Below, in pieces: positions 2-34,844 of a stretch of 64,000 nucleotides of DNA (the stretch's first letter is position 1; each line of letters starts with the position of its first letter). A model generated the notes under the pieces. The model ran no database searches, was not told the origin of the DNA, and was given only the letters and a program-made list of their open reading frames with translations. Source of the DNA: Macrostomum hystrix (Eukaryota; Animalia; Platyhelminthes); NCBI GenBank assembly GCA_950097015.1, contig CATNEN010000028.1, positions 1 through 64,000 on the forward strand, read 5' to 3'. Position numbers and translations under genes: made by a program.

Positions 2-200
2 AACGAATACAAAAAGCGGTTTACTAAATATCGCAACTACTAAAATCACAAACTCAAAACTCACCTCATTAAATGTGTTTGTAAAATTATTTTTTTTATA
101 ATCATCGTAAACTTCATCAAAAAAACTAAAAATATAACCTCACTTTTGCGCTTCGCAGGATTATTACTCGTACATCATATACAGCTGAGAGCAATGATAA
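2..200 (+). repeat. Left outer unique segment of the terminal inverted repeat
   Basis: aacgaatacaaaaagcggt...gagagcaatgataa matches the reverse complement of 34646-34844. Confidence 0.93.
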
Positions 201-3200
201 GGAAGGAAACATTATCTGTGAACACGGCTGTAAAAATTTCAGAGCCCTGACGTGTCGCGTCTCGGAGTTGTAGACCCTCCGAGTCCCCCCCACTCTGATA
301 TCTCCCATTTTAAAAGTACTTTTCGTCACCTCACTGAATCTGGTGGTCAAAAGAAGCTGAAAACTCAGATCTGGAAGGAAACATTATCTGTGAACACGGC
401 TGTAAAATTTCAGAGCCCTGACTAGTCGCGTCTCGGAGTTGTAGACCCTCGAGTCCCCCCCACTCTGATATCTCCCATTTTAAAAGTACTTTTCGTCACT
501 CACTGAATCTGGTGGTCAGACGAGGCTAAAAACTCAGATCTGGAAGGAAACATTATCTGTGAACACGGCTGTAAAATTTCAGAGCCCTGACTAGTCGCGT
601 CTCGGAGTTGTAGACCCTCGAGTCCCCCCCACTCTGATATCTCCCATTTTAAAAGTACTTTTCGTCACCTCACTGAATCTGGTGGTCAGACGAGGCTAAA
701 AAACTCAGATCTGGAGGAAACATTATCTGTGAACACGGCTGTAAAATTTCAGAGCCCTGACTATTCGCGTCTCGGAGTTGTAGACCCTCGAGTCCCCCCC
801 ACTCTGATATCTCCCATTTTAAAAGTACTTTTCGTCACCTCACTGAATCTGGTGGTCAAAAGAAGCTGAAAACTCAGATCTGGAAGGAAACATTATCTGT
901 GAACACGGCTGTAAAATTTCAGAGCCCTGACTAGTCGCGTCTCGGAGTTGTAGACCCTCGAGTCCCCCCCACTCTGATATCTCCCATTTTAAAGTACTTT
1001 TCGTCACCTCACTGAATCTGGTGGTCAGACGAGGCTAAAACTTAGATCTGGAAGGAAACATTATCTGTAAACACGGCTGTAAAATTTCAGAGCCCTGACT
1101 ATTCGCGTCTCGAGTTGTAGACCCTCGAGTCCCCCCCACTCTGATATCTCCCATTTTAAAAGTACTTTTCGTCACCTCACTGAATCTGGTGGTCAAAAGA
1201 AGCTGAAAACTCAGATCTGGAAGGAAACATTATCTGTAAACACGGCTGTAAAATTTCAGAGCCCTGACTATTCGCGTCTCGGAGTTGTAGACCCTCGAGT
1301 CCCCCCCCACTCTGATATCTCCCATTTTAAAAGTACTTTTCGTCACCTCACTGAATCTGGTGGTCAAAAGAAGCTGAAACCTCAGATCTGGAAGGAAACA
1401 TTATCTGTAAACACGGCTGTAAAATTTCAGAGCCCTGACTATTCGCGTCTCGGAGTTGTAGACCCTCGAGTCCCCCCCACTCTGATATCTCCCATTTTAA
1501 AAGTACTTTTCGTCACCTCACTGAATCTGGTGGTCAAAAGAAGCTGAAAACTCAGATCTGGAAGGAAACATTATCTGTGAACACGGCTGTAAAATTTCAG
1601 AGCCCTGACTAGTCGCGTCTCGGAGTTGTAGACCCTCGAGTCCCCCCCACTCTGATATCTCCCATTTTAAAAGTACTTTTCGTCACCTCACTGAATCTGG
1701 TGGTCAAAGAAAGCTGAAAACTCAGATCTGGAAGGAAACATTATCTGTGAACACGGCTGTAAAATTTCAGAGCCCTGACTAGTCACGTCTCGGAGTTGTA
1801 GACCCTCGAGTCCCCCCCACTCTGATATCTCCCATTTTAAAAGTACTTTTCGTCACCTCACTGAATCTGGTGGTCAAAGAAGCTGAAAACTCAGATCTGA
1901 AGGAAACATTATCTGTGAACACGGCTGTAAAATTTCAGAGCCCTGACTAGTCGCGTCTCGGAGTTGTAGACCCTCGAGTCCCCCCCACTCTGATATCTCC
2001 CATTTTAAAAGTACTTTTCGTCACCTCACTGAATCTGGTGGTCAGACGAGGCTAAAAACTCAGATCTGGAAGGAAACATTATCTGTGAACACGGCTGTAA
2101 AATTTCAGAGCCCTGACTATTCGCGTCTCGGAGTTGTAGACCCTCGAGTCCCCCCCACTCTGATATCTCCCATTTTTAAAAGTACTTTTCGTCACCTCAC
2201 TGAATCTGGTGGTCAAAAGAAGCTGAAAACTCAGATCTGGAAGGAAACATTATCTGTGAACACGGCTGTAAAATTTCAGAGCCCTGACTAGTCGCGTCTC
2301 GGAGTTGTAGACCCTCGAGTCCCCCCCACTCTGATATCTCCCATTTTAAAAGTACTTTTCGTCACCTCACTGAATCTGGTGGTCAGACGAGGCTAAAAAC
2401 TTAGATCTGGAAGGAAACATTATCTGTAAACACGGCTGTAAAATTTCAGAGCCCTGACTATTCGCGTCTCGGAGGTTGTAGACCCTCGAGTCCCCCCCAC
2501 TCTGATATCTCCCATTTAAAAGTACTTTTCGTCACCCTCACTGAATCTGGTGGTCAAAAGAAGCTGAAAAACTCAGATCTGGAAGGAAACATTATCTGTA
2601 AACACGGCTGTAAAATTTCAGAGCCCTGACTATTCGCGTCTCGGAGTTGTAGACCCTCGAGTCCCCCCCACTCTGATATCTCCCATTTTAAAAGTACTTT
2701 TCGTCACCTCACTGAATCTGGTGGTCAAAAGAAGCCTGAAAACTCAGATCTGGAAGGAAACATTATCTGTAAACACGGCTGTAAAATTTCAGAGCCCTGA
2801 CTATTCGCGTCTCGGAGTTGTAGACCCTCGAGTCCCCCCCACTCTGATATCTCCCATTTTAAAGTACTTTTCGTCACCTCACTGAATCTGGTGGTCAAAA
2901 GAAGCTGAAAACTCAGATCTGGAAGGAAACATTATCTGTGAACACGGCTGTAAAATTTCAGAGCCCTGACTAGTCGCGTCTCGGAGTTGTAGACCCTCGA
3001 GTCCCCCCCACTCTGATATCTCCCATTTTAAAAGTACTTTTCGTCACCTCACTGAATCTGGTGGTCAAAAGAAGCTGAAAACTCAGATCTGGAAGGAAAC
3101 ATTATCTGTGAACACGGCTGTAAAATTTCAGAGCCCTGACTAGTCACGTCTCGGAGTTGTAGGACCCTCGAGTCCCCCCACTCTGATATCTCCCATTTTA

Positions 3201-6200
3201 AAAGTACTTTTCGTCACCTCACTGAATCTGGTGGTCAGACGAGGCTAAAAACTCAGATCTGGAAGGAAACATTATCTGTAAACACGGCTGTAAAATTTCA
3301 GAGCCCTGACTATTCGCGTCTCGGAGTTGTAGACCCTCGAGTCCCCCCCACTCTGATATCTCCCATTTTAAAAGTACTTTCGTCACCTCACTGAATCTGG
3401 TGGTCAAAAGAAGCTGAAAACTCAGATCTGGAAGGAAACATTATCTGTGAACACGGCTGTAAAATTTCAGAGCCCTGACTAGTCGCGTCTCGGAGTTGTA
3501 GACCCTCGAGTCCCCCCCACTCTGATATCTCCCATTTTAAAAGTACTTTTCGTCCACCTCACTGAATCTGGTGGTCAGACGAGGCTAAAACTTAGATCTG
3601 GAAGGAAACATTATCTGTAAACACGGCTGTAAAATTTCAGAGCCCTGACTATTCGCGTCTCGGAGTTGTAGACCCTCGAGTCCCCCCCACTCTGATATCT
3701 CCCATTTTAAAAGTACTTTTCGTCACCTCACTGAATCTGGTGGTCAAAAGAAGCTGAAAACTCAGATCTGGAAGGAAACATTATCTGTAAACACGGCTGT
3801 AAATTTTCAGAGCCCTGACTATTCGCGTCTCGGAGTTGTAGACCCCTCGAGTCCCCCCCACTCTGATATCTCCCATTTTAAAAGTACTTTTCGTCACCTC
3901 ACTGAATCTGGTGGTCAAAAGAAGCTGAAAAACTCAGATCTGGAAGGATAACATTATCTGTGAACACGGCTGTAAAATTTCAGAGCCCTGACTAGTCGCG
4001 TCTCGGAGTTGTAGACCCTCGAGTCCCCCCACTCTGATATCTCCCATTTTAAAAGTACTTTTCGTCACCTCACTGAATCTGGTGGTCAGACGAGGCTAAA
4101 AACTCAGATCTGGAAGGAAACATTATCTGTAAACACGGCTGTAAAATTTCAGAGCCCTGACTAGTCGCGTCTCGGAGTTGTAGACCCTCGAGTCCCCCCC
4201 ACTCTGATATCTCCCATTTTAAAAGTACTTTTCGTCACCTCACTGAATCTGGTGGTCAAAAGAAGCTGAAAACTCAGATCTGGAAGGAAACATTATCTGT
4301 GAACACGGCTGTAAAATTTCAGAGCCCTGACTAGTCGCGTCTCGGAGTTGTAGACCCTCGAGTCCCCCCCCACTCTGATATCTCCCATTTTAAAAGTACT
4401 TTTCGTCACCTCACTGAATCTGGTGGTCAAAAGAAGCTGAAAACTCAGATCTGGAAGGAAACATTATCTGTAAACACGGCTGTAAAATTTCAGAGCCCTG
4501 ACTATTCGCGTCTCGGAGTTGTAGACCCTCGAGTCCCCCCCACTCTGATATCTCCCATTTTAAAAGTACTTTTCGTCACCTCACTGAATCTGGTGGTCAA
4601 AAGAAGCTGAAAACTCAGATCTGGAAGGAAACATTATCTGTAAACACGGCTGTAAAATTTCAGAGCCCTGACTATTCGCGTCTCGGAGTTGTAGACCCTC
4701 GAGTCCCCCCACTCTGATATCTCCCATTTTAAAAGTACTTTTCGTCACCTCACTGAATCTGGTGGTCAGACGAGGCTAAAAACTCAGATCTGGAAGGAAA
4801 CATTATCTGTAAACACGGCTGTAAAATTTCAGAGCCCTGACTAGTCGCGTCTCGGAGTTGTAGACCTCGAGTCCCCCCACTCTGATATCTCCATTTTAAA
4901 AAGTACTTTTCGTCACCTCACTGAATCTGGTGGTCAAAGAAGCTGAAAACTCAGATCTGGAAGGAAACATTATCTGTAAACACGGCTGTAAAATTTCAGA
5001 GCCCTGACTATTCGCGTCTCGGAGTTGTAGACCCTCGAGTCCCCCCACTCTGATATCTCCCATTTTAAAGTACTTTTCGTCACCTCACTGAATCTGGTGG
5101 TCAAAAGAAGCTGAAAACTCAGATCTGGAAGGAAACATTATCTGTAAACACGGCTGTAAAATTTCAGAGCCCTGACTATTCGCGTCTCGGAGTTGTAGAC
5201 CCTCGAGTCCCCCCCACTCTGATATCTCCCATTTTAAAAGTACTTTTCGTCACCTCACTGAATCTGGTGGTCAAAAGAAGCTGAAAACTCAGATCTGGAA
5301 GGAAACATTATCTGTAAACACGGCTGTAAAATTTCAGAGCCCTGACTATTCGCGTCTCGGAGTTGTAGACCCTCGAGTCCCCCCCACTCTGATATCTCCC
5401 ATTTTAAAAGTACTTTTCGTCACCTCACTGAATCTGGTGGTCAAAAAGAAGCTGAAAACTCAGATCTGGAAGGAAACATTATCTGTAAACACGCTGTAAA
5501 TTTCAGAGCCCTGACTATTCGCGTCTCGGAGTTGTATACCCTCGAGTCCCCCCCACTCTGATATCTCCATTTTAAAAGTACTTTTCGTCACCTCACTGAA
5601 TCTGGTGGTCAAAAGAAGCTGAAAACTCAGATCTGGAAGGAAACATTATCTGTGAACACGGCTGTAAAATTTCAGAGCCCTGACTATTCGCGTCTCGGAG
5701 TTGTAGACCCTCGAGTCCCCCCCACTCTGATATCTCCCATTTTAAAAGTACTTTTCGTCACCTCACTGAATCTGGTGGTCAAAAGAAGCTGAAAACTCAG
5801 ATCTGGAAGGAAACATTATCTGTGAACACGGCTGTAAAATTTCAGAGCCCTGACTAGTCGCGTCTCGGAGTTGTAGACCCTCGAGTCCCCCCCACTCTGA
5901 TATCTCCCATTTTAAAAGTACTTTTCGTCACCTCACTGAATCTGGTGGTCAGACGAGGCTGAAAACTCAGATCTGGAAGGAAACATTATCTGTAAACACG
6001 GCTGTAAAATTTCAGAGCCCTGACTATTCGCGTCTCGGAGTTGTAGACCCTCGAGTCCCCCCCACTCTGATATCTCCCATTTTAAAAGTACTTTTCGTCA
6101 CCTCACTGAATCTGGTGGTCAGACGAGGCTAAAAACTCAGATCTGGAAGGAAACATTATCTGTAAACACGGCTGTAAAATTTCAGAGCCCTGACTATTCG

Positions 6201-9200
6201 CGTCTCGGAGTTGTAGACCCCTCGAGTCCCCCCCACTCTGATATCTCCCATTTTAAAAGTACTTTTCGTCACCTCACTGAATCTGGTGGTCAAAAGAAGC
6301 TGAAAACTCAGATCTGGAAGGAAACATTATCTGTAAACACGGCTGTAAAATTTCAGAGCCCTGACTATTCGCGTCTCGGAGTTGTAGACCCTCGAGTCCC
6401 CCCCACTCTGATATCTCCCATTTTAAAAGTACTTTTCGTCACCTCACTGAATCTGGTGGTCAAAGAAGCTGAAAACTCAGATCTGGAAGGAAACATTATC
6501 TGTAAACACGGCTGTAAAATTTCAGAGCCCTGACTATTCGCGTCTCGGAGTTGTAGACCCTCGAGTCCCCCCCACTCTGATATCTCCCATTTTAAAGTAC
6601 TTTTCGTCACCTCACTGAATCTGGTGGTCAAAAGAAGCTGAAAACTCAGATCTGGAAGGAAACATTATCTGTGAACACGGCTGTAAAATTTCAGAGCCCT
6701 GACTAGTCGCGTCTCGGAGTTGTAGACCCTCGAGTCCCCCCCACTCTGATATCTCCCATTTTAAAAGTACTTTTCGTCACCTCACTGAATCTGGTGGTCA
6801 AAAGAAGCTGAAAACTCAGATCTGGAAGGAAACATTATCTGTGAACACGGCTGTAAAATTTCAGAGCCCTGACTAGTCACGTCTCGGAGTTGTAGACCCT
6901 CGAGTCCCCCCCACTCTGATATCTCCCATTTTAAAAGTACTTTTCGTCACCTCACTGAATCTGGTGGTCAGACGAGGCTAAAAAACTCAGATCTGGAAGG
7001 AAACATTATCTGTAAACACGGCTGTAAAATTTCAGAGCCCTGACTATTCGCGTCTCGGAGTTGTAGACCCTCGAGTCCCCCCCACTCTGATATCTCCCAT
7101 TTTAAAAGTACTTTTCGTCACCTCACTGAATCTGGTGGTCAAAAGAAGCTGAAAACTCAGATCTGGAAGGAAACATTATCTGTGAACACGGCTGTAAAAT
7201 TTCAGAGCCCTGACTAGTCGCGTCTCGGAGTTGTAGACCCTCGAGTCCCCCCCACTCTGATATCTCCCATTTTAAAAGTACTTTTCGTCACCTCACTGAA
7301 TCTGGTGGTCAGACGAGGCTAAAAACTTAGATCTGGAAGGAAACATTATCTGTAAACACGGCTGTAAAATTTCAGAGCCCTGACTATTCGCGTCTCGGAG
7401 TTGTAGACCCTCGAGTCCCCCCCCACTCTGATATCTCCCATTTTAAAAGTACTTTTCGTCACCTCACTGAATCTGGTGGTCAAAAGAAGCTGAAAACTCA
7501 GATCTGGAAGGAAACATTATCTGTAAACACGGCTGTAAAATTTCAGAGCCCTGACTATTCGCGTCTCGGAGTTGTAGACCCTCGAGTCCCCCCCACTCTG
7601 ATATCTCCCATTTTAAAAGTACTTTTCGTCACCTCACTGAATCTGGTGGTCAAAAGAAGCTGAAAACTCAGATCTGGAAGGAAACATTATCTGTGAACAC
7701 GGCTGTAAAATTTCAGAGCCCTGACTAGTCGCGTCTCGGAGTTGTAGACCCTCGAGTCCCCCCACTCTGATATCTCCCATTTTAAAAGTACTTTTCGTCA
7801 CCTCACTGAATCTGGTGGTCAGACGAGGCTAAAAACTCAGATCTGGAAGGAAACATTATCTGTAAACACGGCTGTAAAATTTCAGAGCCCTGACTAGTCG
7901 CGTCTCGGAGTTGTAGACCCTCGAGTCCCCCCACTCTGATATCTCCCATTTTAAAAGTACTTTTCGTCACCTCACTGAATCTGGTGGTCAAAAGAAGCTG
8001 AAAACTCAGATCTGGAAGGAAACATTATCTGTGAACACGGCTGTAAAATTTCAGAGCCCTGACTAGTCGCGTCTCGGAGTTGTAGACCCTCGAGTCCCCC
8101 CACTCTGATATCTCCCATTTTAAAAGTACTTTTCGTCACCTCACTGAATCTGGTGGTCAAAAGAAGCTGAAAACTCAGATCTGGAAGGAAACATTATCTG
8201 TAAACACGGCTGTAAAATTTCAGAGCCCTGACTATTCGCGTCTCGGAGTTGTAGACCCTCGAGTCCCCCCCACTCTGATATCTCCCATTTTAAAAGTACT
8301 TTTCGTCACCTCACTGAATCTGGTGGTCAAAAGAAGCTGAAAACTCAGATCTGGAAGGAAACATTATCTGTAAACACGGCTGTAAAATTTCAGAGCCCTG
8401 ACTATTCGCGTCTCGGAGTTGTAGACCCTCGAGTCCCCCCACTCTGATATCTCCCATTTTAAAAGTACTTTTCGTCACCTCACTGAATCTGGTGGTCAGA
8501 CGAGGCTAAAAACTCAGATCTGGAAGGAAACATTATCTGTAAACACGGCTGTAAAATTTCAGAGCCCTGACTAGTCGCGTCTCGGAGTTGTAGACCCTCG
8601 AGTCCCCCCCACTCTGATATCTCCCATTTTAAAAGTACTTTTCGTCACCTCACTGAATCTGGTGGTCAAAAGAAGCTGAAAACTCAGATCTGGAAGGAAA
8701 CATTATCTGTGAACACGGCTGTAAAATTTCAGAGCCCTGACTAGTCGCGTCTCGGAGTTGTAGACCCTCGAGTCCCCCCCACTCTGATATCTCCCATTTT
8801 AAAAGTACTTTTCGTCACCTCACTGAATCTGGTGGTCAGACGAGGCTAAAAACTTAGATCTGGAAGGAAACATTATCTGTAAACACGGCTGTAAAATTTC
8901 AGAGCCCTGACTATTCGCGTCTCGGAGTTGTAGACCCTCGAGTCCCCCCCACTCTGATATCTCCAATTTTAAAAGTACTTTTCGTCACCTCACTGAATCT
9001 GGTGGTCAAAAGAAGCTGAAAACTCAGATCTGGAAGGAAACATTATCTGTAAACACGGCTGTAAAATTTCAGAGCCCTGACTATTCGCGTCTCGGAGTTG
9101 TAGACCCTCGAGTCCCCCCCACTCTGATATCTCCCATTTTAAAAGTACTTTTCGTCACCTCACTGAATCTGGTGGTCAAAAGAAGCTGAAAACTCAGATC

Positions 9201-12200
9201 TGGAAGGAAACATTATCTGTAAACACGGCTGTAAAATTTCAGAGCCCTGACTATTCGCGTCTCGGAGTTGTAGACCCTCGAGTCCCCCCCACTCTGATAT
9301 CTCCCATTTTAAAAGTACTTTTCGTCACCTCACTGAATCTGGTGGTCAAAAGAAGCTGAAAACTCAGATCTGGAAGGAAACATTATCTGTAAACACGGCT
9401 GTAAAATTTCAGAGCCCTGACTAGTCGCGTCTCGGAGTTGTAGACCCTCGAGTCCCCCCCACTCTTATATCTCCCATTTTAAAAGTACTTTTCGTCACCT
9501 CACTGAATCTGGTGGTCAAAAGAAGCTGAAAACTCAGATCTGGAAGGAAACATTATCTGTGAACACGGCTGTAAAATTTCAGAGCCCTGACTAGTCGCGT
9601 CTCGGAGTTGTAGACCCTCGAGTCCCCCCCACTCTGATATCTCCCATTTTAAAAGTACTTTTCGTCACCTCACTGAATCTGGTGGTCAAAGAAGCTGAAA
9701 ACTCAGATCTGGAAGGAAACATTATCTGTGAACACGGCTGTAAAATTTCAGAGCCCTGACTAGTCACGTCTCGGAGTTGTAGACCCTCGAGTCCCCCCCA
9801 CTCTGATATCTCCCATTTTAAAAGTACTTTTCGTCACCTCACTGAATCTGGTGGTCAAAAGAAGCTGAAAACTCAGATCTGGAAGGAAACATTATCTGTA
9901 AACACGGCTGTAAAATTTCAGAGCCCTGACTATTCGCGTCTCGGAGTTGTAGACCCTCGAGTCCCCCCCACTCTGATATCTCCCATTTTAAAAGTACTTT
10001 TCGTCACCTCACTGAATCTGGTGGTCAAAAGAAGCTGAAAACTCAGATCTGGAAGGAAACATTATCTGTAAACACGGCTGTAAAATTTCAGAGCCCTGAC
10101 TATTCGCGTCTCGGAGTTGTATACCCTCGAGTCCCCCCCACTCTGATATCTCCCATTTTAAAAGTACTTTTCGTCACCTCACTGAATCTGGTGGTCAAAA
10201 GAAGCTGAAAACTCAGATCTGGAAGGAAACATTATCTGTGAACACGGCTGTAAAATTTCAGAGCCCTGACTATTCGCGTCTCGGAGTTGTAGACCCTCGA
10301 GTCCCCCCCACTCTGATATCTCCCATTTTAAAAGTACTTTTCGTCACCTCACTGAATCTGGTGGTCAAAAGAAGCTGAAAACTCAGATCTGGAAGGAAAC
10401 ATTATCTGTGAACACGGCTGTAAAATTTCAGAGCCCTGACTAGTCGCGTCTCGGAGTTGTAGACCCTCGAGTCCCCCCCACTCTGATATCTCCCATTTTA
10501 AAAGTACTTTTCGTCACCTCACTGAATCTGGTGGTCAGACGAGGCTAAAAACTCAGATCTGGAAGGAAACATTATCTGTAAACACGGCTGTAAAATTTCA
10601 GAGCCCTGACTATTCGCGTCTCGGAGTTGTAGACCCTCGAGTCCCCCCCACTCTGATATCTCCCATTTTAAAAGTACTTTTCGTCACCTCACTGAATCTG
10701 GTGGTCAGACGAGGCTAAAAACTTAGATCTGGAAGGAAACATTATCTGTAAACACGGCTGTAAAATTTCAGAGCCCTGACTATTCGCGTCTCGGAGTTGT
10801 AGACCCTCGAGTCCCCCCCACTCTGATATCTCCCATTTTAAAAGTACTTTTCGTCACCTCACTGAATCTGGTGGTCAAAAGAAGCTGAAAACTCAGATCT
10901 GGAAGGAAACATTATCTGTAAACACGGCTGTAAAATTTCAGAGCCCTGACTATTCGCGTCTCGGAGTTGTAGACCCTCGAGTCCCCCCCACTCTGATATC
11001 TCCCATTTTAAAAGTACTTTTCGTCACCTCACTGAATCTGGTGGTCAAAAGAAGCTGAAAACTCAGATCTGGAAGGAAACATTATCTGTAAACACGGCTG
11101 TAAAATTTCAGAGCCCTGACTATTCGCGTCTCGGAGTTGTAGACCCTCGAGTCCCCCCCCACTCTGATATCTCCCATTTTAAAAGTACTTTTCGTCACCT
11201 CACTGAATCTGGTGGTCAAAAGAAGCTGAAAACTCAGATCTGGAAGGAAACATTATCTGTAAACACGGCTGTAAAATTTCAGAGCCCTGACTATTCGCGT
11301 CTCGGAGTTGTAGACCCTCGAGTCCCCCCCACTCTGATATCTCCCATTTTAAAAGTACTTTTCGTCACCTCACTGAATCTGGTGGTCAAAAGAAGCTGAA
11401 AACTCAGATCTGGAAGGAAACATTATCTGTGAACACGGCTGTAAAATTTCAGAGCCCTGACTAGTCACGTCTCGGAGTTGTAGACCCTCGAGTCCCCCCA
11501 CTCTGATATCTCCCATTTTAAAAGTACTTTTCGTCACCTCACTGAATCTGGTGGTCAGACGAGGCTAAAAACTCAGATCTGGAAGGAAACATTATCTGTA
11601 AACACGGCTGTAAAATTTCAGAGCCCTGACTATTCGCGTCTCGGAGTTGTAGACCCTCGAGTCCCCCCCACTCTGATATCTCCCATTTTAAAAGTACTTT
11701 TCGTCACCTCACTGAATCTGGTGGTCAAAAGAAGCTGAAAACTCAGATCTGGAAGGAAACATTATCTGTGAACACGGCTGTAAAATTTCAGAGCCCTGAC
11801 TAGTCGCGTCTCGGAGTTGTAGACCCTCGAGTCCCCCCCACTCTGATATCTCCCATTTTAAAAGTACTTTTCGTCACCTCACTGAATCTGGTGGTCAGAC
11901 GAGGCTAAAAACTTAGATCTGGAAGGAAACATTATCTGTAAACACGGCTGTAAAATTTCAGAGCCCTGACTATTCGCGTCTCGGAGTTGTAGACCCTCGA
12001 GTCCCCCCCACTCTGATATCTCCCATTTTAAAAGTACTTTTCGTCACCTCACTGAATCTGGTGGTCAAAAGAAGCTGAAAACTCAGATCTGGAAGGAAAC
12101 ATTATCTGTAAACACGGCTGTAAAATTTCAGAGCCCTGACTATTCGCGTCTCGGAGTTGTAGACCCTCGAGTCCCCCCCACTCTGATATCTCCCATTTTA

Positions 12201-22204: not shown

Positions 22205-22210
22205 AATAAA
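22205..22210 (+). terminator. Polyadenylation signal of the transposase gene
   Basis: AATAAA about 70 nt after the stop at 22133. Confidence 0.45.
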
Positions 22211-22485: not shown

Positions 22486-22591
22486 CACGAAAAATTTACC
22501 AAAAGCAAATCTTAAATTATATTCAGTAAAATCAAAAAAAAAACTACAAAAAATACAGACTACAAAAACAATAGCTCCTTCGAAACCTCAT

Positions 22592-25500: not shown

Positions 25501-28500
25501 CCAGATTCAGTGAGGTGACGAAAAGTACTTTTAAAATGGGAGATATCAGAGTGGGGGGGACTCGAGGGTCTACAACTCCGAGACGCGAATAGTCAGGGCT
25601 CTGAAATTTTACAGCCGTGTTTACAGATAATGTTTCCTTCCAGATCTGAGTTTTCAGCTTCTTTTGACCACCAGATTCAGTGAGGTGACGAAAAGTACTT
25701 TTAAAATGGGAGATATCAGAGTGGGGGGGACTCGAGGGTCTACAACTCCGAGACGCGAATAGTCAGGGCTCTGAAATTTTACAGCCGTGTTTACAGATAA
25801 TGTTTCCTTCCAGATCTGAGTTTTCAGCTTCTTTTGACCACCAGATTCAGTGAGGTGACGAAAAGTACTTTTAAAATGGGAGATATCAGAGTGGGGGGGA
25901 CTCGAGGGTCTACAACTCCGAGACGCGACTAGTCAGGGCTCTGAAATTTTACAGCCGTGTTCACAGATAATGTTTCCTTCCAGATCTGAGTTTTCAGCTT
26001 CTTTTGACCACCAGATTCAGTGAGGTGACGAAAAGTACTTTTAAAATGGGAGATATCAGAGTGGGGGGGACTCGAGGGTCTACAACTCCGAGACGCGACT
26101 AGTCAGGGCTCTGAAATTTTACAGCCGTGTTTACAGATAATGTTTCCTTCCAGATCTGAGTTTTTAGCCTCGTCTGACCACCAGATTCAGTGAGGTGACG
26201 AAAAGTACTTTTAAAATGGGAGATATCAGAGTGGGGGGACTCGAGGGTCTACAACTCCGAGACGCGACTAGTCAGGGCTCTGAAATTTTACAGCCGTGTT
26301 CACAGATAATGTTTCCTTCCAGATCTGAGTTTTCAGCTTCTTTTGACCACCAGATTCAGTGAGGTGACGAAAAGTACTTTTAAAATGGGAGATATCAGAG
26401 TGGGGGGGACTCGAGGGTCTACAACTCCGAGACGCGAATAGTCAGGGCTCTGAAATTTTACAGCCGTGTTTACAGATAATGTTTCCTTCCAGATCTGAGT
26501 TTTCAGCTTCTTTTGACCACCAGATTCAGTGAGGTGACGAAAAGTACTTTTAAAATGGGAGATATCAGAGTGGGGGGGACTCGAGGGTCTACAACTCCGA
26601 GACGCGAATAGTCAGGGCTCTGAAATTTTACAGCCGTGTTTACAGATAATGTTTCCTTCCAGATCTGAGTTTTCAGCTTCTTTTGACCACCAGATTCAGT
26701 GAGGTGACGAAAAGTACTTTTAAAATGGGAGATATCAGAGTGGGGGGGACTCGAGGGTCTACAACTCCGAGACGCGAATAGTCAGGGCTCTGAAATTTTA
26801 CAGCCGTGTTTACAGATAATGTTTCCTTCCAGATCTGAGTTTTCAGCTTCTTTTGACCACCAGATTCAGTGAGGTGACGAAAAGTACTTTTAAAATGGGA
26901 GATATCAGAGTGGGGGGGACTCGAGGGTCTACAACTCCGAGACGCGACTAGTCAGGGCTCTGAAATTTTACAGCCGTGTTCACAGATAATGTTTCCTTCC
27001 AGATCTGAGTTTTCAGCTTCTTTTGACCACCAGATTCAGTGAGGTGACGAAAAGTACTTTTAAAATGGGAGATATCAGAGTGGGGGGGACTCGAGGGTCT
27101 ACAACTCCGAGACGCGACTAGTCAGGGCTCTGAAATTTTACAGCCGTGTTTACAGATAATGTTTCCTTCCAGATCTGAGTTTTTAGCCTCGTCTGACCAC
27201 CAGATTCAGTGAGGTGACGAAAAGTACTTTTAAAATGGGAGATATCAGAGTGGGGGGACTCGAGGGTCTACAACTCCGAGACGCGACTAGTCAGGGCTCT
27301 GAAATTTTACAGCCGTGTTCACAGATAATGTTTCCTTCCAGATCTGAGTTTTCAGCTTCTTTTGACCACCAGATTCAGTGAGGTGACGAAAAGTACTTTT
27401 AAAATGGGAGATATCAGAGTGGGGGGGACTCGAGGGTCTACAACTCCGAGACGCGACTAGTCAGGGCTCTGAAATTTTACAGCCGTGTTCACAGATAATG
27501 TTTCCTTCCAGATCTGAGTTTTTAGCCTCGTCTGACCACCAGATTCAGTGAGGTGACGAAAAGTACTTTTAAAATGGGAGATATCAGAGTGGGGGGGACT
27601 CGAGGGTCTACAACTCCGAGACGCGACTAGTCAGGGCTCTGAAATTTTACAGCCGTGTTCACAGATAATGTTTCCTTCCAGATCTGAGTTTTCAGCTTCT
27701 TTTGACCACCAGATTCAGTGAGGTGACGAAAAGTACTTTTAAAATGGGAGATATCAGAGTGGGGGGGACTCGAGGGTCTACAACTCCGAGACGCGACTAG
27801 TCAGGGCTCTGAAATTTTACAGCCGTGTTTACAGATAATGTTTCCTTCCAGATCTGAGTTTTTAGCCTCGTCTGACCACCAGATTCAGTGAGGTGACGAA
27901 AAGTACTTTTAAAATGGGAGATATCAGAGTGGGGGGACTCGAGGGTCTACAACTCCGAGACGCGACTAGTCAGGGCTCTGAAATTTTACAGCCGTGTTCA
28001 CAGATAATGTTTCCTTCCAGATCTGAGTTTTCAGCTTCTTTTGACCACCAGATTCAGTGAGGTGACGAAAAGTACTTTTAAAATGGGAGATATCAGAGTG
28101 GGGGGGACTCGAGGGTCTACAACTCCGAGACGCGAATAGTCAGGGCTCTGAAATTTTACAGCCGTGTTTACAGATAATGTTTCCTTCCAGATCTGAGTTT
28201 TCAGCTTCTTTTGACCACCAGATTCAGTGAGGTGACGAAAAGTACTTTTAAAATGGGAGATATCAGAGTGGGGGGGACTCGAGGGTCTACAACTCCGAGA
28301 CGCGAATAGTCAGGGCTCTGAAATTTTACAGCCGTGTTTACAGATAATGTTTCCTTCCAGATCTGAGTTTTCAGCTTCTTTTGACCACCAGATTCAGTGA
28401 GGTGACGAAAAGTACTTTTAAAATGGGAGATATCAGAGTGGGGGGGACTCGAGGGTCTACAACTCCGAGACGCGAATAGTCAGGGCTCTGAAATTTTACA

Positions 28501-31500
28501 GCCGTGTTCACAGATAATGTTTCCTTCCAGATCTGAGTTTTCAGCTTCTTTTGACCACCAGATTCAGTGAGGTGACGAAAAGTACTTTTAAAATGGGAGA
28601 TATCAGAGTGGGGGGGACTCGAGGGTCTACAACTCCGAGACGCGACTAGTCAGGGCTCTGAAATTTTACAGCCGTGTTCACAGATAATGTTTCCTTCCAG
28701 ATCTGAGTTTTCAGCTTCTTTTGACCACCAGATTCAGTGAGGTGACGAAAAGTACTTTTAAAATGGGAGATATCAGAGTGGGGGGGACTCGAGGGTCTAC
28801 AACTCCGAGACGCGACTAGTCAGGGCTCTGAAATTTTACAGCCGTGTTCACAGATAATGTTTCCTTCCAGATCTGAGTTTTTAGCCTCGTCTGACCACCA
28901 GATTCAGTGAGGTGACGAAAAGTACTTTTAAAATGGGAGATATCAGAGTGGGGGGGACTCGAGGGTCTACAACTCCGAGACGCGACTAGTCAGGGCTCTG
29001 AAGTTTTACAGCCGTGTTCACAGATAATGTTTCCTTCCAGATCTGAGTTTTCAGCTTCTTTTGACCACCAGATTCAGTGAGGTGACGAAAAGTACTTTTA
29101 AAATGGGAGATATCAGAGTGGGGGGGACTCGAGGGTCTACAACTCCGAGACGCGACTAGTCAGGGCTCTGAAATTTTACAGCCGTGTTTACAGATAATGT
29201 TTCCTTCCAGATCTGAGTTTTCAGCTTCTTTTGACCACCAGATTCAGTGAGGTGACGAAAAGTACTTTTAAAATGGGAGATATCAGAGTGGGGGGGACTC
29301 GAGGGTCTACAACTCCGAGACGCGAATAGTCAGGGCTCTGAAATTTTACAGCCGTGTTTACAGATAATGTTTCCTTCCAGATCTGAGTTTTCAAGTTCTT
29401 TTGACCACCAGATTCAGTGAGGTGACGAAAAGTACTTTTAAAATGGGAGATATCAGAGTGGGGGGGACTCGAGGGTCTACAACTCCGAGACGCGAATAGT
29501 CAGGGCTCTGAAATTTTACAGCCGTGTTTACAGATAATGTTTCCTTCCAGATCTGAGTTTTCAGCTTCTTTTGACCACCAGATTCAGTGAGGTGACGAAA
29601 AGTACTTTTAAAATGGGAGATATCAGAGTGGGGGGGACTCGAGGGTCTACAACTCCGAGACGCGACTAGTCAGGGCTCTGAAATTTTACAGCCGTGTTCA
29701 CAGATAATGTTTCCTTCCAGATCTGAGTTTTCAGCTTCTTTTGACCACCAGATTCAGTGAGGTGACGAAAAGTACTTTTAAAATGGGAGATATCAGAGTG
29801 GGGGGGACTCGAGGGTCTACAACTCCGAGACGCGACTAGTCAGGGCTCTGAAATTTTACAGCCGTGTTTACAGATAATGTTTCCTTCCAGATCTGAGTTT
29901 TTAGCCTCGTCTGACCACCAGATTCAGTGAGGTGACGAAAAGTACTTTTAAAATGGGAGATATCAGAGTGGGGGGACTCGAGGGTCTACAACTCCGAGAC
30001 GCGACTAGTCAGGGCTCTGAAATTTTACAGCCGTGTTCACAGATAATGTTTCCTTCCAGATCTGAGTTTTCAGCTTCTTTTGACCACCAGATTCAGTGAG
30101 GTGACGAAAAGTACTTTTAAAATGGGAGATATCAGAGTGGGGGGGACTCGAGGGTCTACAACTCCGAGACGCGAATAGTCAGGGCTCTGAAATTTTACAG
30201 CCGTGTTTACAGATAATGTTTCCTTCCAGATCTGAGTTTTCAGCTTCTTTTGACCACCAGATTCAGTGAGGTGACGAAAAGTACTTTTAAAATGGGAGAT
30301 ATCAGAGTGGGGGGGACTCGAGGGTCTACAACTCCGAGACGCGAATAGTCAGGGCTCTGAAATTTTACAGCCGTGTTTACAGATAATGTTTCCTTCCAGA
30401 TCTGAGTTTTCAGCTTCTTTTGACCACCAGATTCAGTGAGGTGACGAAAAGTACTTTTAAAATGGGAGATATCAGAGTGGGGGGGACTCGAGGGTCTACA
30501 ACTCCGAGACGCGAATAGTCAGGGCTCTGAAATTTTACAGCCGTGTTTACAGATAATGTTTCCTTCCAGATCTGAGTTTTCAGCTTCTTTTGACCACCAG
30601 ATTCAGTGAGGTGACGAAAAGTACTTTTAAAATGGGAGATATCAGAGTGGGGGGGACTCGAGGGTCTACAACTCCGAGACGCGACTAGTCAGGGCTCTGA
30701 AATTTTACAGCCGTGTTCACAGATAATGTTTCCTTCCAGATCTGAGTTTTCAGCTTCTTTTGACCACCAGATTCAGTGAGGTGACGAAAAGTACTTTTAA
30801 AATGGGAGATATCAGAGTGGGGGGGACTCGAGGGTCTACAACTCCGAGACGCGACTAGTCAGGGCTCTGAAATTTTACAGCCGTGTTTACAGATAATGTT
30901 TCCTTCCAGATCTGAGTTTTTAGCCTCGTCTGACCACCAGATTCAGTGAGGTGACGAAAAGTACTTTTAAAATGGGAGATATCAGAGTGGGGGGACTCGA
31001 GGGTCTACAACTCCGAGACGCGACTAGTCAGGGCTCTGAAATTTTACAGCCGTGTTCACAGATAATGTTTCCTTCCAGATCTGAGTTTTCAGCTTCTTTT
31101 GACCACCAGATTCAGTGAGGTGACGAAAAGTACTTTTAAAATGGGAGATATCAGAGTGGGGGGGACTCGAGGGTCTACAACTCCGAGACGCGACTAGTCA
31201 GGGCTCTGAAATTTTACAGCCGTGTTCACAGATAATGTTTCCTTCCAGATCTGAGTTTTCAGCTTCTTTTGACCACCAGATTCAGTGAGGTGACGAAAAG
31301 TACTTTTAAAATGGGAGATATCAGAGTGGGGGGGACTCGAGGGTCTACAACTCCGAGACGCGACTAGTCAGGGCTCTGAAATTTTACAGCCGTGTTTACA
31401 GATAATGTTTCCTTCCAGATCTGAGTTTTTAGCCTCGTCTGACCACCAGATTCAGTGAGGTGACGAAAAGTACTTTTAAAATGGGAGATATCAGAGTGGG

Positions 31501-34500
31501 GGGACTCGAGGGTCTACAACTCCGAGACGCGACTAGTCAGGGCTCTGAAATTTTACAGCCGTGTTCACAGATAATGTTTCCTTCCAGATCTGAGTTTTCA
31601 GCTTCTTTTGACCACCAGATTCAGTGAGGTGACGAAAAGTACTTTTAAAATGGGAGATATCAGAGTGGGGGGGACTCGAGGGTCTACAACTCCGAGACGC
31701 GAATAGTCAGGGCTCTGAAATTTTACAGCCGTGTTTACAGATAATGTTTCCTTCCAGATCTGAGTTTTTAGCCTCGTCTGACCACCAGATTCAGTGAGGT
31801 GACGAAAAGTACTTTTAAAATGGGAGATATCAGAGTGGGGGGGACTCGAGGGTCTACAACTCCGAGACGTGACTAGTCAGGGCTCTGAAATTTTACAGCC
31901 GTGTTCACAGATAATGTTTCCTTCCAGATCTGAGTTTTCAGCTTCTTTTGACCACCAGATTCAGTGAGGTGACGAAAAGTACTTTTAAAATGGGAGATAT
32001 CAGAGTGGGGGGGACTCGAGGGTCTACAACTCCGAGACGCGACTAGTCAGGGCTCTGAAATTTTACAGCCGTGTTCACAGATAATGTTTCCTTCCAGATC
32101 TGAGTTTTCAGCTTCTTTTGACCACCAGATTCAGTGAGGTGACGAAAAGTACTTTTAAAATGGGAGATATCAGAGTGGGGGGGACTCGAGGGTCTACAAC
32201 TCCGAGACGCGAATAGTCAGGGCTCTGAAATTTTACAGCCGTGTTTACAGATAATGTTTCCTTCCAGATCTGAGTTTTCAGCTTCTTTTGACCACCAGAT
32301 TCAGTGAGGTGACGAAAAGTACTTTTAAAATGGGAGATATCAGAGTGGGGGGGACTCGAGGGTCTACAACTCCGAGACGCGAATAGTCAGGGCTCTGAAA
32401 TTTTACAGCCGTGTTTACAGATAATGTTTCCTTCCAGATCTGAGTTTTCAGCTTCTTTTGACCACCAGATTCAGTGAGGTGACGAAAAGTACTTTTAAAA
32501 TGGGAGATATCAGAGTGGGGGGGACTCGAGGGTCTACAACTCCGAGACGCGAATAGTCAGGGCTCTGAAATTTTACAGCCGTGTTTACAGATAATGTTTC
32601 CTTCCAGATCTAAGTTTTTAGCCTCGTCTGACCACCAGATTCAGTGAGGTGACGAAAAGTACTTTTAAAATGGGAGATATCAGAGTGGGGGGGACTCGAG
32701 GGTCTACAACTCCGAGACGCGACTAGTCAGGGCTCTGAAATTTTACAGCCGTGTTCACAGATAATGTTTCCTTCCAGATCTGAGTTTTCAGCTTCTTTTG
32801 ACCACCAGATTCAGTGAGGTGACGAAAAGTACTTTTAAAATGGGAGATATCAGAGTGGGGGGGACTCGAGGGTCTACAACTCCGAGACGCGAATAGTCAG
32901 GGCTCTGAAATTTTACAGCCGTGTTCACAGATAATGTTTCCTTCCAGATCTGAGTTTTTAGCCTCGTCTGACCACCAGATTCAGTGAGGTGACGAAAAGT
33001 ACTTTTAAAATGGGAGATATCAGAGTGGGGGGGACTCGAGGGTCTACAACTCCGAGACGCGACTAGTCAGGGCTCTGAAATTTTACAGCCGTGTTCACAG
33101 ATAATGTTTCCTTCCAGATCTGAGTTTTCAGCTTCTTTTGACCACCAGATTCAGTGAGGTGACGAAAAGTACTTTTAAAATGGGAGATATCAGAGTGGGG
33201 GGGACTCGAGGGTCTACAACTCCGAGACGTGACTAGTCAGGGCTCTGAAATTTTACAGCCGTGTTCACAGATAATGTTTCCTTCCAGATCTGAGTTTTCA
33301 GCTTCTTTTGACCACCAGATTCAGTGAGGTGACGAAAAGTACTTTTAAAATGGGAGATATCAGAGTGGGGGGGACTCGAGGGTCTACAACTCCGAGACGC
33401 GACTAGTCAGGGCTCTGAAATTTTACAGCCGTGTTCACAGATAATGTTTCCTTCCAGATCTGAGTTTTCAGCTTCTTTTGACCACCAGATTCAGTGAGGT
33501 GACGAAAAGTACTTTTAAAATGGGAGATATCAGAGTGGGGGGGACTCGAGGGTCTACAACTCCGAGACGCGAATAGTCAGGGCTCTGAAATTTTACAGCC
33601 GTGTTTACAGATAATGTTTCCTTCCAGATCTGAGTTTTCAGCTTCTTTTGACCACCAGATTCAGTGAGGTGACGAAAAGTACTTTTAAAATGGGAGATAT
33701 CAGAGTGGGGGGGACTCGAGGGTCTACAACTCCGAGACGCGAATAGTCAGGGCTCTGAAATTTTACAGCCGTGTTTACAGATAATGTTTCCTTCCAGATC
33801 TGAGTTTTCAGCTTCTTTTGACCACCAGATTCAGTGAGGTGACGAAAAGTACTTTTAAAATGGGAGATATCAGAGTGGGGGGGACTCGAGGGTCTACAAC
33901 TCCGAGACGCGAATAGTCAGGGCTCTGAAATTTTACAGCCGTGTTTACAGATAATGTTTCCTTCCAGATCTAAGTTTTTAGCCTCGTCTGACCACCAGAT
34001 TCAGTGAGGTGACGAAAAGTACTTTTAAAATGGGAGATATCAGAGTGGGGGGGACTCGAGGGTCTACAACTCCGAGACGCGACTAGTCAGGGCTCTGAAA
34101 TTTTACAGCCGTGTTCACAGATAATGTTTCCTTCCAGATCTGAGTTTTCAGCTTCTTTTGACCACCAGATTCAGTGAGGTGACGAAAAGTACTTTTAAAA
34201 TGGGAGATATCAGAGTGGGGGGGACTCGAGGGTCTACAACTCCGAGACGCGAATAGTCAGGGCTCTGAAATTTTACAGCCGTGTTCACAGATAATGTTTC
34301 CTTCCAGATCTGAGTTTTTAGCCTCGTCTGACCACCAGATTCAGTGAGGTGACGAAAAGTACTTTTAAAATGGGAGATATCAGAGTGGGGGGGACTCGAG
34401 GGTCTACAACTCCGAGACGCGACTAGTCAGGGCTCTGAAATTTTACAGCCGTGTTCACAGATAATGTTTCCTTCCAGATCTGAGTTTTCAGCTTCTTTTG

Positions 34501-34645
34501 ACCACCAGATTCAGTGAGGTGACGAAAAGTACTTTTAAAATGGGAGATATCAGAGTGGGGGGGACTCGAGGGTCTACAACTCCGAGACGCGACACGTCAG
34601 GGCTCTGAAATTTTACAGCCGTGTTCACAGATAATGTTTCCTTCC
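22592..34645 (-). repeat. Right arm: inverted tandem array of the same 170-bp satellite, ~71 units
   Basis: Reverse complement of the left-arm unit with the same diagnostic variants. The outermost unit carries the private variant gacacg (34591-34596), mirroring cgtgtc (251-256). Confidence 0.98.
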
Positions 34646-34844
34646 TTATCATTGCTCTCAGCTGTATATGATGTACGAGTAATAATCCTGCGAAGCGCAA
34701 AAGTGAGGTTATATTTTTAGTTTTTTTGATGAAGTTTACGATGATTATAAAAAAAATAAATTTTACAAACACATTTAATGAGGTGAGTTTTGAGTTGTGA
34801 TTTTAGTAGTTGCGATATTTAGTAAACCGCTTTTTGTATTCGTT
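34646..34844 (-). repeat. Right outer unique segment of the terminal inverted repeat (may extend further right)
   Basis: Reverse complement of 2-200. Confidence 0.93.

What the first reader, a model, noticed from the sequence alone, without database searches (positions are those of the whole stretch)
2..34844. ~35-kb foldback transposon whose inverted arms are kilobase-scale arrays of a 170-bp satellite
Seen: ~199-bp unique outer IR, then ~17 kb and ~12 kb inverted arrays of one 170-bp unit around a 5.5-kb transposase core. Known: foldback elements with tandem-repeat TIRs exist (Drosophila FB-NOF and Tetris, Arabidopsis FARE, Phantom MULEs), but the arms I know of are far shorter. Inference: this is an autonomous or recently autonomous MULE that carries and amplifies a satellite-scale array, i.e. 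a mobile satellite or satellite-seeding element.
Basis: partly seen in the sequence, partly recalled or inferred. Interest (0 to 1): 0.9.

Follow-up and report, generated by a model that had tools for sequence, protein, structure and literature searches.

The report
Rehavkus-type foldback transposon with giant arms
This is a structurally complete cut-and-paste DNA transposon of the little-studied Rehavkus group, probably in a Macrostomum flatworm, whose two inverted ends have each grown into a 12-17 kb array of a 170-bp repeat; beetles have the same kind of element, so it is an extreme new example, not a new kind of thing.

Summary
A 199-bp unique inverted repeat (2-200 / 34646-34844) bounds two inverted arrays of one 170-bp unit (about 100 and 71 copies). 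These flank a 5.5-kb unique core with one long ORF.

The outermost ~16-18 monomers of the two arms carry the same sequence variants in mirror order. That is what a true long terminal inverted repeat predicts, and an inversion inside ordinary satellite does not.

The ORF encodes, in order:
- a WRKY-fold zinc finger;
- an RNase-H-fold DDE/CxxH transposase;
- a SENP/Ulp1-like protease with its catalytic residues intact;
- a PHD finger.

No Pfam transposase model detects it. Its catalytic motifs match the published Rehavkus alignment almost residue for residue (LHLDATGS, PV.EMITSEH, VTDFS.A, FSN..VE..F..VK).

Rehavkus elements are already described in Tribolium as foldback transposons with a TIR plus variable subterminal tandem repeats (a 164-bp unit in Rehavkus-1_TC). 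Some of those inverted termini exceed 11 kb, and derived satellite arrays reach 80 kb.

The premise that known arms are far shorter is outdated. Mobility, target-site duplication and genome-wide seeding cannot be tested from this window. Verdict: a new, extreme member of a known kind.

The parts
2..200 (+). Left outer unique terminal inverted repeat (at least 199 bp; cut by the window start)
   Evidence: Aligns to the reverse complement of 34646-34844 with two 1-nt indels. Absent from the rest of the window.
201..17133 (+). Left subterminal array, 170-bp unit, about 100 copies
   Evidence: TRF 99.7 copies, 97% matches. 100 monomers delimited; the outer ~40 carry many 1-4 nt indels.
17134..17701 (+). 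Unique 5' non-coding part of the core
   Evidence: The array ends inside a monomer at 17133. No inverted counterpart at the other inner junction.
17702..18483 (+). Upstream ORF segment starting at an ATG. It is out of frame with the transposase ORF because of one extra G in a G run at about 18483.
   Evidence: ORF list. GGGGG instead of the GGGG seen in the other units of the 33-bp repeat.
18025..19075 (+). 33-bp minisatellite (31.8 copies) lying in the open frame upstream of the transposase. It is followed by a 15-bp repeat at 19112-19310.
   Evidence: TRF. Reads as the AVAASVVPARG repeat.
19107..22133 (+). Transposase ORF from the first in-frame Met after the 33-bp minisatellite array to the stop (1008 aa, no internal stop)
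   Evidence: 6409 cluster representatives related to it at E<=1e-3.
19515..19787 (+). N-terminal four-stranded zinc-finger DNA-binding domain (C57, C86-x4-C91, H121-x-H)
   Evidence: AF2 model pLDDT 80. 12 of the 13 best Foldseek PDB matches are WRKY domains. The Cys/His residues are invariant or nearly invariant in 79 relatives.
20136..21035 (+). DDE catalytic core: D (20136), D (20376), CxxH (20502-20513), E (21033)
   Evidence: Invariant or nearly invariant columns. AF2 pLDDT 86.7. Foldseek matches IS256-family ISCth4, P element, Hermes and RAG1/Transib transposases. The motifs match the Rehavkus reference alignment.
21360..21848 (+). SENP/Ulp1-like (C48) cysteine protease domain with His, Asp, Gln and Cys in place
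   Evidence: phmmer hit to SENP2 at 2e-06. The aligned positions are HFYLVYID, LDT and LQFDGHSCG.
21957..22103 (+). C-terminal PHD-type zinc finger
   Evidence: Weak PDB hits to PHD fingers (E 0.1-0.3). Pfam PHD found in 9 of 45 relatives.
22134..22591 (+). Unique 3' non-coding part of the core
22592..34645 (-). Right subterminal array, the same 170-bp unit inverted, about 71 copies
   Evidence: TRF 70.9 copies, 98% matches. Same polymorphic sites and variant classes as the left arm.
34646..34844 (-). Right outer unique terminal inverted repeat. The flank begins TACTCAGTT at 34845.

Best explanation
Window 2-34844 is one copy of a Rehavkus-type foldback DNA transposon. Rehavkus is a cut-and-paste group affiliated with the Mutator superfamily. 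The host is probably a Macrostomum flatworm.

Each end consists of a unique TIR of about 200 bp followed by a subterminal array of a 170-bp unit. By analogy with the foldback MULE Muta1, the subterminal repeats probably carry the transposase-binding sites, and more copies strengthen binding and excision.

Here the arrays have expanded to about 100 and 71 copies, most likely by unequal exchange or replication slippage in their inner parts, which now differ between the arms. The outer ~3 kb has stayed collinear between the arms.

The single ORF encodes a WRKY-fold zinc-finger DNA-binding domain, a DDE/CxxH RNase-H-fold transposase, a Ulp1-like protease and a PHD finger. From Met 19107 it is open with all catalytic residues present, so the copy is structurally competent.

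Shown: the architecture, the homology, the conserved catalytic residues, and the mirror collinearity of the outer arms.
Inferred: transposition, binding sites in the 170-bp unit, the expansion mechanism, and any role in seeding satellite arrays.
For: Architecture.

Mirror order of variants: the outermost ~16-18 monomers carry the same variant position by position in both arms. They differ by 0-3 substitutions per mirrored pair, against 3.4 for random inter-arm pairs, with one extra monomer on the left.

Shared polymorphism: both arms have the same polymorphic sites at similar frequencies.

Transposase:
- large family;
- invariant or nearly invariant D, D, CxxH, E;
- confident AF2 model;
- best fold matches to the ISCth4/IS256 transposase (1.2e-4), P element (1.8e-4), Hermes and RAG1/Transib;
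- WRKY-fold N-terminal domain. That fold is the DNA-binding domain of MULE transposases (PMC1702500, abstract).

Rehavkus identity: the motif blocks of Rehavkus-1_TC in the published alignment are LHLDATGSV, PVFEMITSEH, VVTDFSFA, LCCAHFMK, PLWS and FSNAPVENWFCQVK. The window has LHLDATGSI, PVAEMITSEH, IVTDFSWA, ICTNHVIR, PLFC and FSNSYVESYFSDVK.

Literature:
- Rehavkus has TIRs of 26-412 bp, one ORF, a PHD finger and a 9-bp TSD.
[quoted passage not shown] The Rehavkus-1_TC unit is 164 bp, termini carry up to 50 repeats or exceed 11 kb, and derived arrays reach 80.5 kb.
- Subterminal repeats enhance binding, cleavage and excision in Muta1.

Related loci: a homologue in another organism (L001) is flanked by inverted arms containing 187-bp tandem repeats. 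Another (L006) has 16 copies of a 186-bp unit just 3' of the gene.
Against: - The left flank lies outside the window, so no target-site duplication can be shown. The one visible flank base (pos 1 = C) does not match the T predicted by a perfect 9-bp duplication of TACTCAGTT.
- No second copy, empty site or excision footprint is available.
- No Pfam transposase model detects the protein, and the fold search cannot separate IS256/Mutator from P element.
- The ORF that starts at ATG 17702 is broken by a 1-nt frameshift.
- Whether a 35-kb element with 12-17 kb arms can still be mobilised is unknown.
- Two homologue loci with 10-kb flanks (Holothuria L007, Mytilus L008) show no flanking arrays. In L002 and L009 the 166-bp arrays on the two sides of the gene are in direct orientation.
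Confidence: 0.8

Rival explanations
1. Same element, but dead. The copy is an immobile relic whose arms have expanded beyond what the transposase can synapse. In that case the arrays now evolve purely as a local satellite or palindrome, and the ORF is decaying or on its way to domestication.
For: One frameshift in the longest reading frame. The inner two-thirds of the arms have diverged in order and copy number. No other copy is visible in the window. The database holds no close relative; the best identities are 28-31%.
Against: From Met 19107 the 1008-aa ORF has no stop, and all catalytic residues of the transposase and the protease are present. Both TIRs are nearly identical. The frameshift is a homopolymer length change of the kind that also litters the first ~7 kb of the window, so it may be a sequencing error.
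Confidence: 0.3
2. This is not a transposon. An ordinary 170-bp satellite block suffered an inversion, and a transposase-like gene merely sits at the breakpoint.
For: The inner junctions fall at different monomer phases and there is no inner inverted repeat. The arms differ in length and in their internal order.
Against: A unique 199-bp sequence caps both outer ends in inverted orientation, and the sequence beyond the right cap is non-satellite. The outer ~3 kb is collinear in mirror order. The gene between the arms belongs to the one transposon group already known to carry such termini.
Confidence: 0.05
3. Assembly artefact: an inverted duplication created by chimeric or fold-back long reads, or by mis-joining of repeat arrays at a contig end.
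For: The left repeat starts at base 2 of the window. The first ~7 kb has many 1-4 nt indels per monomer, as at a poorly polished contig end. Long near-identical arrays are hard to assemble.
Against: Fold-back artefacts give a perfect palindrome around a point. Here a 5.5-kb non-palindromic core with a single coherent ORF separates arms of different length and different internal variant order. The architecture matches that published for the same transposon group in other assemblies.
Confidence: 0.07

Closest known systems
Rehavkus DNA transposons of Tribolium (Rehavkus-1_TC, Rehavkus-3_TC, and the TfSat06-bearing Rehavkus-1_TC-like elements)
   Same: The catalytic motifs of the transposase match. 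[quoted passage not shown] Arms can reach satellite scale: up to 50 repeats, over 11 kb.
   Different: The host is a flatworm, whereas a 2019 survey listed Rehavkus only from insects and an annelid. The arms are 12.3 and 17.1 kb and the whole element is ~35 kb, against 4.9-18.5 kb for the Repbase consensus elements. A Ulp1-like protease domain is fused to the transposase; the sources I read do not mention one for Rehavkus. The minisatellites lie in the 5' part of the ORF, not before the 3' TIR. The repeat unit shares no sequence with those of other hosts.
Tetris / Foldback (FB) elements of Drosophila
   Same: Foldback architecture with tandem repeats inside long TIRs. TIR-220 repeats of Tetris also form kb-size satellite-like arrays.
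   Different: Tetris appears non-autonomous and carries no transposase of its own. No sequence relationship was tested or seen here.
Muta1 (Aedes aegypti; Phantom/MULE, type 2 foldback)
   Same: TIR with subterminal tandem repeats. Experiments show that the repeats increase transposase binding, cleavage and excision. This supplies the mechanistic model used here.
   Different: Muta1 has nine short subterminal repeats, not ~100 units of 170 bp. It is a canonical MULE, whereas the protein here fails the Pfam MULE and FLYWCH models.
Tm1 (Meloidogyne) and Galileo (Drosophila)
   Same: Foldback-like composite TIRs of variable length built from tandem repeats around a transposase gene.
   Different: Tm1 uses ~14-bp repeats and a FLYWCH+MULE Phantom transposase. 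Galileo uses a P-superfamily (THAP) transposase. Both show that the foldback architecture is convergent across superfamilies.

Membership tests
Rehavkus (Repbase group, MULE superfamily sensu Yuan & Wessler) | Transposase catalytic core homologous to reference Rehavkus transposases | tested here: met
   I compared motif blocks by eye against the published alignment (Rehavkus-1_TC, -3_TC, -1_HR). LHLDATGS is 8/9 identical, PV.EMITSEH 9/10, VTDFS.A 6/8, CxxH is present, and FSN..VE..F..VK is 9/14. No formal tree or E-value against Repbase proteins was possible.
Rehavkus (Repbase group, MULE superfamily sensu Yuan & Wessler) | TIRs of tens to hundreds of bp (26-412 bp listed) | tested here: met
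   An outer inverted repeat of at least 199 bp with two indels.
Rehavkus (Repbase group, MULE superfamily sensu Yuan & Wessler) | [quoted passage not shown] | tested here: met
   About 100 and 71 copies of a 170-bp unit. The trait is described.
Rehavkus (Repbase group, MULE superfamily sensu Yuan & Wessler) | 9-bp target-site duplication | tested here: inconclusive
   The right flank is TACTCAGTT. Only one base of the left flank is visible (pos 1 = C, where T is expected). Either the TIR extends beyond the window with a mismatch or the duplication is imperfect.
Rehavkus (Repbase group, MULE superfamily sensu Yuan & Wessler) | PHD finger in the transposase protein; single ORF | tested here: met
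   One long ORF. A C-terminal C4HC3-type motif gives weak PDB PHD hits. Pfam PHD is found in 9 of 45 relatives.
Rehavkus (Repbase group, MULE superfamily sensu Yuan & Wessler) | Minisatellite before the 3' TIR | tested here: inconclusive
   33-bp and 15-bp minisatellites are present, but in the 5' part of the ORF. The 3' non-coding core has none. If the subterminal array itself is what the source means, the feature is met.
Mutator/MULE sensu stricto, including Phantom | Pfam MULE (PF10551) transposase domain, and for Phantom an N-terminal FLYWCH domain | tested here: not met
   The window protein and 45 relatives give no hit at E<=0.01. At E<=10 there are only 2 of 79 MULE hits (best 0.11) and 1 of 79 ZSWIM1-3 RNaseH-like hit (0.004), and FLYWCH is not among the listed families.
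Mutator/MULE sensu stricto, including Phantom | WRKY-GCM1-fold zinc-finger DNA-binding domain | tested here: met
   AF2 model of residues encoded by 19515-19787 (pLDDT 80). The best Foldseek PDB matches are WRKY domains, with probability up to 0.99 and TM up to 0.69 but weak E-values of 0.04-2.
Mutator/MULE sensu stricto, including Phantom | Catalytic fold closest to IS256/Mutator rather than other DDE superfamilies | tested here: inconclusive
   The ISCth4 (IS256 family) transposase is the top hit at 1.2e-4, but the P element transposase is practically equal at 1.8e-4, with Hermes and RAG1/Transib close behind.
Foldback elements (structural class) | Long inverted termini built of tandem subrepeats, with a distinct outer domain | tested here: met
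Satellite DNA | Long homogeneous tandem arrays of a ~170-bp monomer that are abundant in the genome | not testable with these tools
   Array length and homogeneity are met within the element. Genome-wide abundance cannot be assessed: the host genome is not searchable here, and a 21-kb syntenic M. lignano stretch has no copy.

The most novel reading that the evidence does not exclude
The element is currently mobile in a flatworm genome and acts as a vehicle that deposits ready-made 10-kb-scale 170-bp arrays at new loci, which would be a true mobile satellite. The fused Ulp1-like protease and PHD module, which recurs with UCH and OTU variants across this very large and Pfam-invisible transposase family, would then be a chromatin or SUMO-directed counter-silencing device that lets such elements persist.
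Probability: 0.15. Interest if true: 0.7.

Novelty: new member of a known kind. Interest (0 to 1): 0.45.

Why it matters
The element gives a clean, fully sequenced example with both ends, both arrays and an apparently intact transposase in one record. It shows the stage at which subterminal repeats of a foldback transposon have reached satellite dimensions while still attached to their TIRs. That stage sits between "repeats inside a TE" and "free satellite array", the transition proposed for Tetris and for the Tribolium Rehavkus elements.

It also extends Rehavkus to Platyhelminthes. Together with the profile search (6409 cluster representatives, including mussel and sea cucumber), it shows that this group is far larger and more widespread than the handful of Repbase entries suggests. 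The group is also missed by Pfam-based annotation.

Tried and rejected
- Pfam on the ORF, on 45 full-length relatives and on 79 cores: no transposase family found.
- Sequence search of PDB with the core profile: nothing relevant.
- Exact look-up of two window proteins in the assembly index: not on record.
- Literature search for three strings of the 170-bp unit: no paper.
- Zisupton+Ulp1 search: no paper. The KDZ/Zisupton idea was dropped because Pfam's KDZ models did not hit.
- The Phantom paper (PMC2927773) and my guessed PMC id for Yuan & Wessler 2011 (PMC3093488, from memory) could not be retrieved. I therefore could not confirm whether the bracovirus hit O92526 is one of the published viral Phantom proteins.
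- Empty-site test with the syntenic M. lignano contig L010: only exons align, at ~83% nt, so the insertion site cannot be compared.
With the 6-sequence alignment it returned 10 short metagenome contigs with no informative termini.
- Contigs of the two best-scoring relatives end at the gene, so they say nothing about termini.
- Similarity between the 170-bp unit, the 199-bp TIR, and the 187-, 186- and 166-bp units of other hosts: none found.
- A simple fold-back read artefact was rejected because the core is not palindromic and the arms differ.
Full report
**1. The observation**

Tandem Repeats Finder reports a 170-bp array at 201-17133 (99.7 copies, 97% matches). It reports the reverse complement of the same unit at 22592-34645 (70.9 copies, 98% matches). 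GC skew changes sign between the arms.

Window 2-200 aligns to the reverse complement of 34646-34844 with two single-base indels. The alignment continues into the first monomer, which carries the same rare variant in both arms.

The 5.5-kb stretch between the arms is unique. The 170-bp unit, the 199-bp repeat and the core do not occur in the other 29 kb of the window. The description is therefore correct.

The one limitation is that the left repeat begins at window base 2, so the left flank is unseen.

**2. Fine structure of the arms**

I cut the arms into 100 and 71 monomers. I classified them by five polymorphic columns.

Read from the outside inwards, the strings begin BCCFEAAABICFEAAABGA on the left and BCFEAAABICFEAAABGA on the right. 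The outermost ~16-18 monomers (~3 kb) are thus collinear in mirror order apart from one extra monomer.

Mirrored pairs differ by 0-3 substitutions, whereas random inter-arm pairs differ by 3.4 on average. Further in, the order diverges, and both arms show a ~22-monomer (3.7 kb) periodicity. Both arms share the same polymorphic sites at similar frequencies.

This pattern fits a genuine long terminal inverted repeat whose inner parts have since expanded and been reshuffled independently. It is not what an inversion within a pre-existing satellite would leave.

The inner junctions fall at different monomer phases, and there is no inner inverted repeat.

The outer ~40 monomers of the left arm carry many 1-4 nt indels, while the rest of the arms carry almost none. 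This looks like poor consensus quality near a record end. I infer that the window may start at a contig start.

**3. The gene**

The ORF 18024-22133 is open throughout. Its 5' part is a 33-bp minisatellite followed by a 15-bp one. An ATG at 17702 opens the same repeat-encoded peptide in another frame. The two frames are joined by a single extra G in a G run at ~18483, which is either a real frameshift or a homopolymer error.

From Met 19107 the ORF is 1008 aa without a stop.

Pfam finds nothing in it.

PDB sequence search finds a SENP2-like Ulp1 protease domain (2e-06) with His, Asp, Gln and Cys aligned. It also finds weak PHD-finger matches at the C-terminus.

The first ~640 residues have few word-sharing relatives (six, 22-30% identical). 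A profile of these relatives retrieves 6409 cluster representatives at E<=1e-3 and 1067 at E<=1e-30. Named examples come from Mytilus coruscus and Holothuria leucospilota.

Across 79 relatives, C57, T254, C374, H377, E551 and K558 are invariant. C86, C91, H121, D252 and D332 are at least 90% conserved. In the window these are LHLDATGS, VTDFSWA, CTNH and SNSYVESYF. That is a DDE triad with the CxxH motif.

None of 45 full-length relatives has a Pfam transposase domain. Their accessory domains are PHD (9), Peptidase_C48 (8) and UCH (2), and one earlier hit has OTU.

**4. Fold**

AlphaFold2 with the 79-sequence alignment gives pLDDT 86.7 and pTM 0.80.

Foldseek against PDB gives these best matches:
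- ISCth4 (IS256 family) transposase, 1.2e-4;
- Drosophila P element transposase, 1.8e-4;
- Hermes, 2.6e-3;
- RAG1/Transib, about 5e-3 to 1e-2.

The protein is therefore an RNase-H-fold transposase with a helical insertion domain. The fold search alone does not fix the superfamily.

The N-terminal four-stranded domain was modelled alone (pLDDT 80). It matches WRKY DNA-binding domains in 12 of the 13 best PDB hits, with probability up to 0.99 but weak E-values. The WRKY-GCM1 fold is the DNA-binding domain of MULE transposases (PMC1702500).

At lax thresholds, the only transposase-type Pfam hits among the 25 listed families are Mutator-type. These are MULE in 2 of 79 members (best 0.11) and ZSWIM1-3 RNaseH-like in 1 of 79 (0.004).

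Against predicted viral structures, the single strong hit is an uncharacterised protein of Chelonus inanitus bracovirus (1e-10).

**5. Family assignment**

A survey of Mutator evolution (PMC6446971) uses the Repbase group Rehavkus as the outgroup to MULEs. It describes Rehavkus as having a 9-bp TSD, TIRs of 26-400 bp (up to 412 bp in the supplementary table), one ORF, a PHD finger and a minisatellite.

Its supplementary alignment contains the Rehavkus catalytic cores. Rehavkus-1_TC reads LHLDATGSV, PVFEMITSEH, VVTDFSFA, LCCAHFMK, PLWS and FSNAPVENWFCQVK. The window protein reads LHLDATGSI, PVAEMITSEH, IVTDFSWA, ICTNHVIR, PLFC and FSNSYVESYFSDVK.

I take this block-by-block agreement as showing that the window transposase is a Rehavkus transposase. 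It is a comparison by eye and not a tree, because the Repbase proteins are not available to the tools.

Other papers treat Rehavkus as part of the MULE superfamily.

**6. What is already known about such elements**

[quoted passage not shown] The reported cases are:
- Rehavkus-1_TC (9.5 kb) carries 5-8 copies of a 164-bp unit.
- Rehavkus-3_TC copies carry up to 50 repeats in their inverted termini.
- TfSat06 forms inverted termini over 11 kb long in Rehavkus-1_TC-like elements.
- TCsat12 has expanded to arrays of 80.5 kb.

For the foldback MULE Muta1, more subterminal repeats strengthen transposase binding, are needed for cleavage and raise excision frequency (PMC5499845). Tetris in Drosophila virilis is the earlier example of foldback-TIR repeats becoming satellite.

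The present element is an extreme instance, with arms of 17.1 and 12.3 kb and a total of ~35 kb, against 4.9-18.5 kb for the Repbase consensus elements.

**7. Relatives in other organisms**

Six homologue loci with 10-kb flanks gave the following:
- L001 has the gene between inverted arms containing 187-bp tandem repeats.
- L006 has 16 copies of a 186-bp unit starting ~480 bp after the stop, but nothing upstream.
- L002 and L009, from one sample, have 166-bp arrays on both sides, mostly in direct orientation.
- L007 (Holothuria) and L008 (Mytilus) have none.

Unit lengths cluster at 164-187 bp without any sequence similarity between hosts. The association is frequent in this family but not universal.

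**8. Host**

An L7Ae/NHP2-like exon at 36875-37273 is 95% identical in protein to a Macrostomum lignano protein. The M. lignano contig carrying it is syntenic, with NHP2-like, a second L7Ae gene and an EF-hand/AIF-1-like gene. It aligns only in exons, at ~83% nucleotide identity.

The window therefore comes from a Macrostomum relative or a diverged paralogous region. No empty-site comparison is possible.

**9. Rivals**

- An inversion within ordinary satellite is contradicted by the unique outer caps, the mirror collinearity and the identity of the gene.
- A fold-back assembly artefact is contradicted by the non-palindromic core and the unequal, differently ordered arms. Only reads can exclude mis-assembly of copy number.
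- A dead relic of the same element remains quite possible, because mobility is not shown.

**10. Verdict**

It is a new member of a known kind and of moderate interest. It would rank higher if the host genome shows that it is mobile and seeds arrays.

Noticed in passing
window 18025-19310: The open frame upstream of the transposase domains is built of a 33-bp minisatellite (31.8 copies, AVAASVVPARG) and a 15-bp one (13 copies, acidic DAGSD-type). Two relatives (P0005 in L002, P0009 in L009) also have repeat-encoded N-terminal regions, with periods of 51 and 108 bp.
   Followed up: partly
window ~18483: A single extra G in a G run shifts the frame between the ATG-initiated ORF (17702) and the transposase ORF. 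The first ~7 kb of the window also shows many 1-4 nt indels per monomer. Together these suggest homopolymer-type consensus errors near a record end.
   Followed up: partly
family-wide (alignment A4; P0002): Relatives of this transposase carry interchangeable C-terminal ubiquitin-like-protein protease modules: Peptidase_C48 in 8 of 45, UCH in 2 of 45, and OTU in P0002. PHD fingers occur in 9 of 45. The transposase core itself has no Pfam model, despite 6409 cluster representatives.
   Followed up: partly
BFVD entry O92526 (Chelonus inanitus bracovirus): This is the only strong structural match among predicted viral proteins (E 1e-10, 572 aligned columns). It is an uncharacterised polydnavirus protein and presumably a transposase of this or a neighbouring group. 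I could not confirm from the papers held whether it is one of the published viral Phantom proteins.
   Followed up: no
window 37696-62357: The right half of the window is packed with unrelated minisatellite arrays. Their periods are 30, 48, 42, 20, 40, 23, 22, 63, 16, 9 and 33 bp, and each is 0.3-1.5 kb long. They lie between conserved genes. The NHP2-like to EF-hand gene distance is ~11.7 kb here against ~6 kb in the syntenic M. lignano contig L010.
   Followed up: partly
window 36875-37273, 38934-39331, 48599-49513(-): Host genes: two L7Ae/NHP2-like genes and an EF-hand (AIF-1/EFHD-like) gene. They are in the same order as on M. lignano contig NIVC01002885.1, and the exons are ~83% identical in DNA.
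   Followed up: partly
window 47737-47806 (-): An Rfam tRNA match just above the gathering score (30.5 against 29 bits). ARAGORN did not call it, so it may be a degenerate tRNA or a tRNA-derived repeat.
   Followed up: no
L002 3908-4986 and 15961-16803; L009 16004-16557: Two different transposase homologues from one environmental eukaryote assembly (ERZ25072999) are both surrounded by the same 166-bp (331-bp dimer) tandem repeat. The arrays are mostly in direct orientation, which does not fit a simple foldback layout.
   Followed up: partly
window 370-540 (monomer): The 170-bp unit contains several short palindromes: GACTAGTC, TTTTAAAA, AAAGTACTTT, CTCGAG and GATATC. It shares only a 9-mer with the 199-bp TIR. 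Whether any of these is a transposase-binding site is unknown.
   Followed up: no
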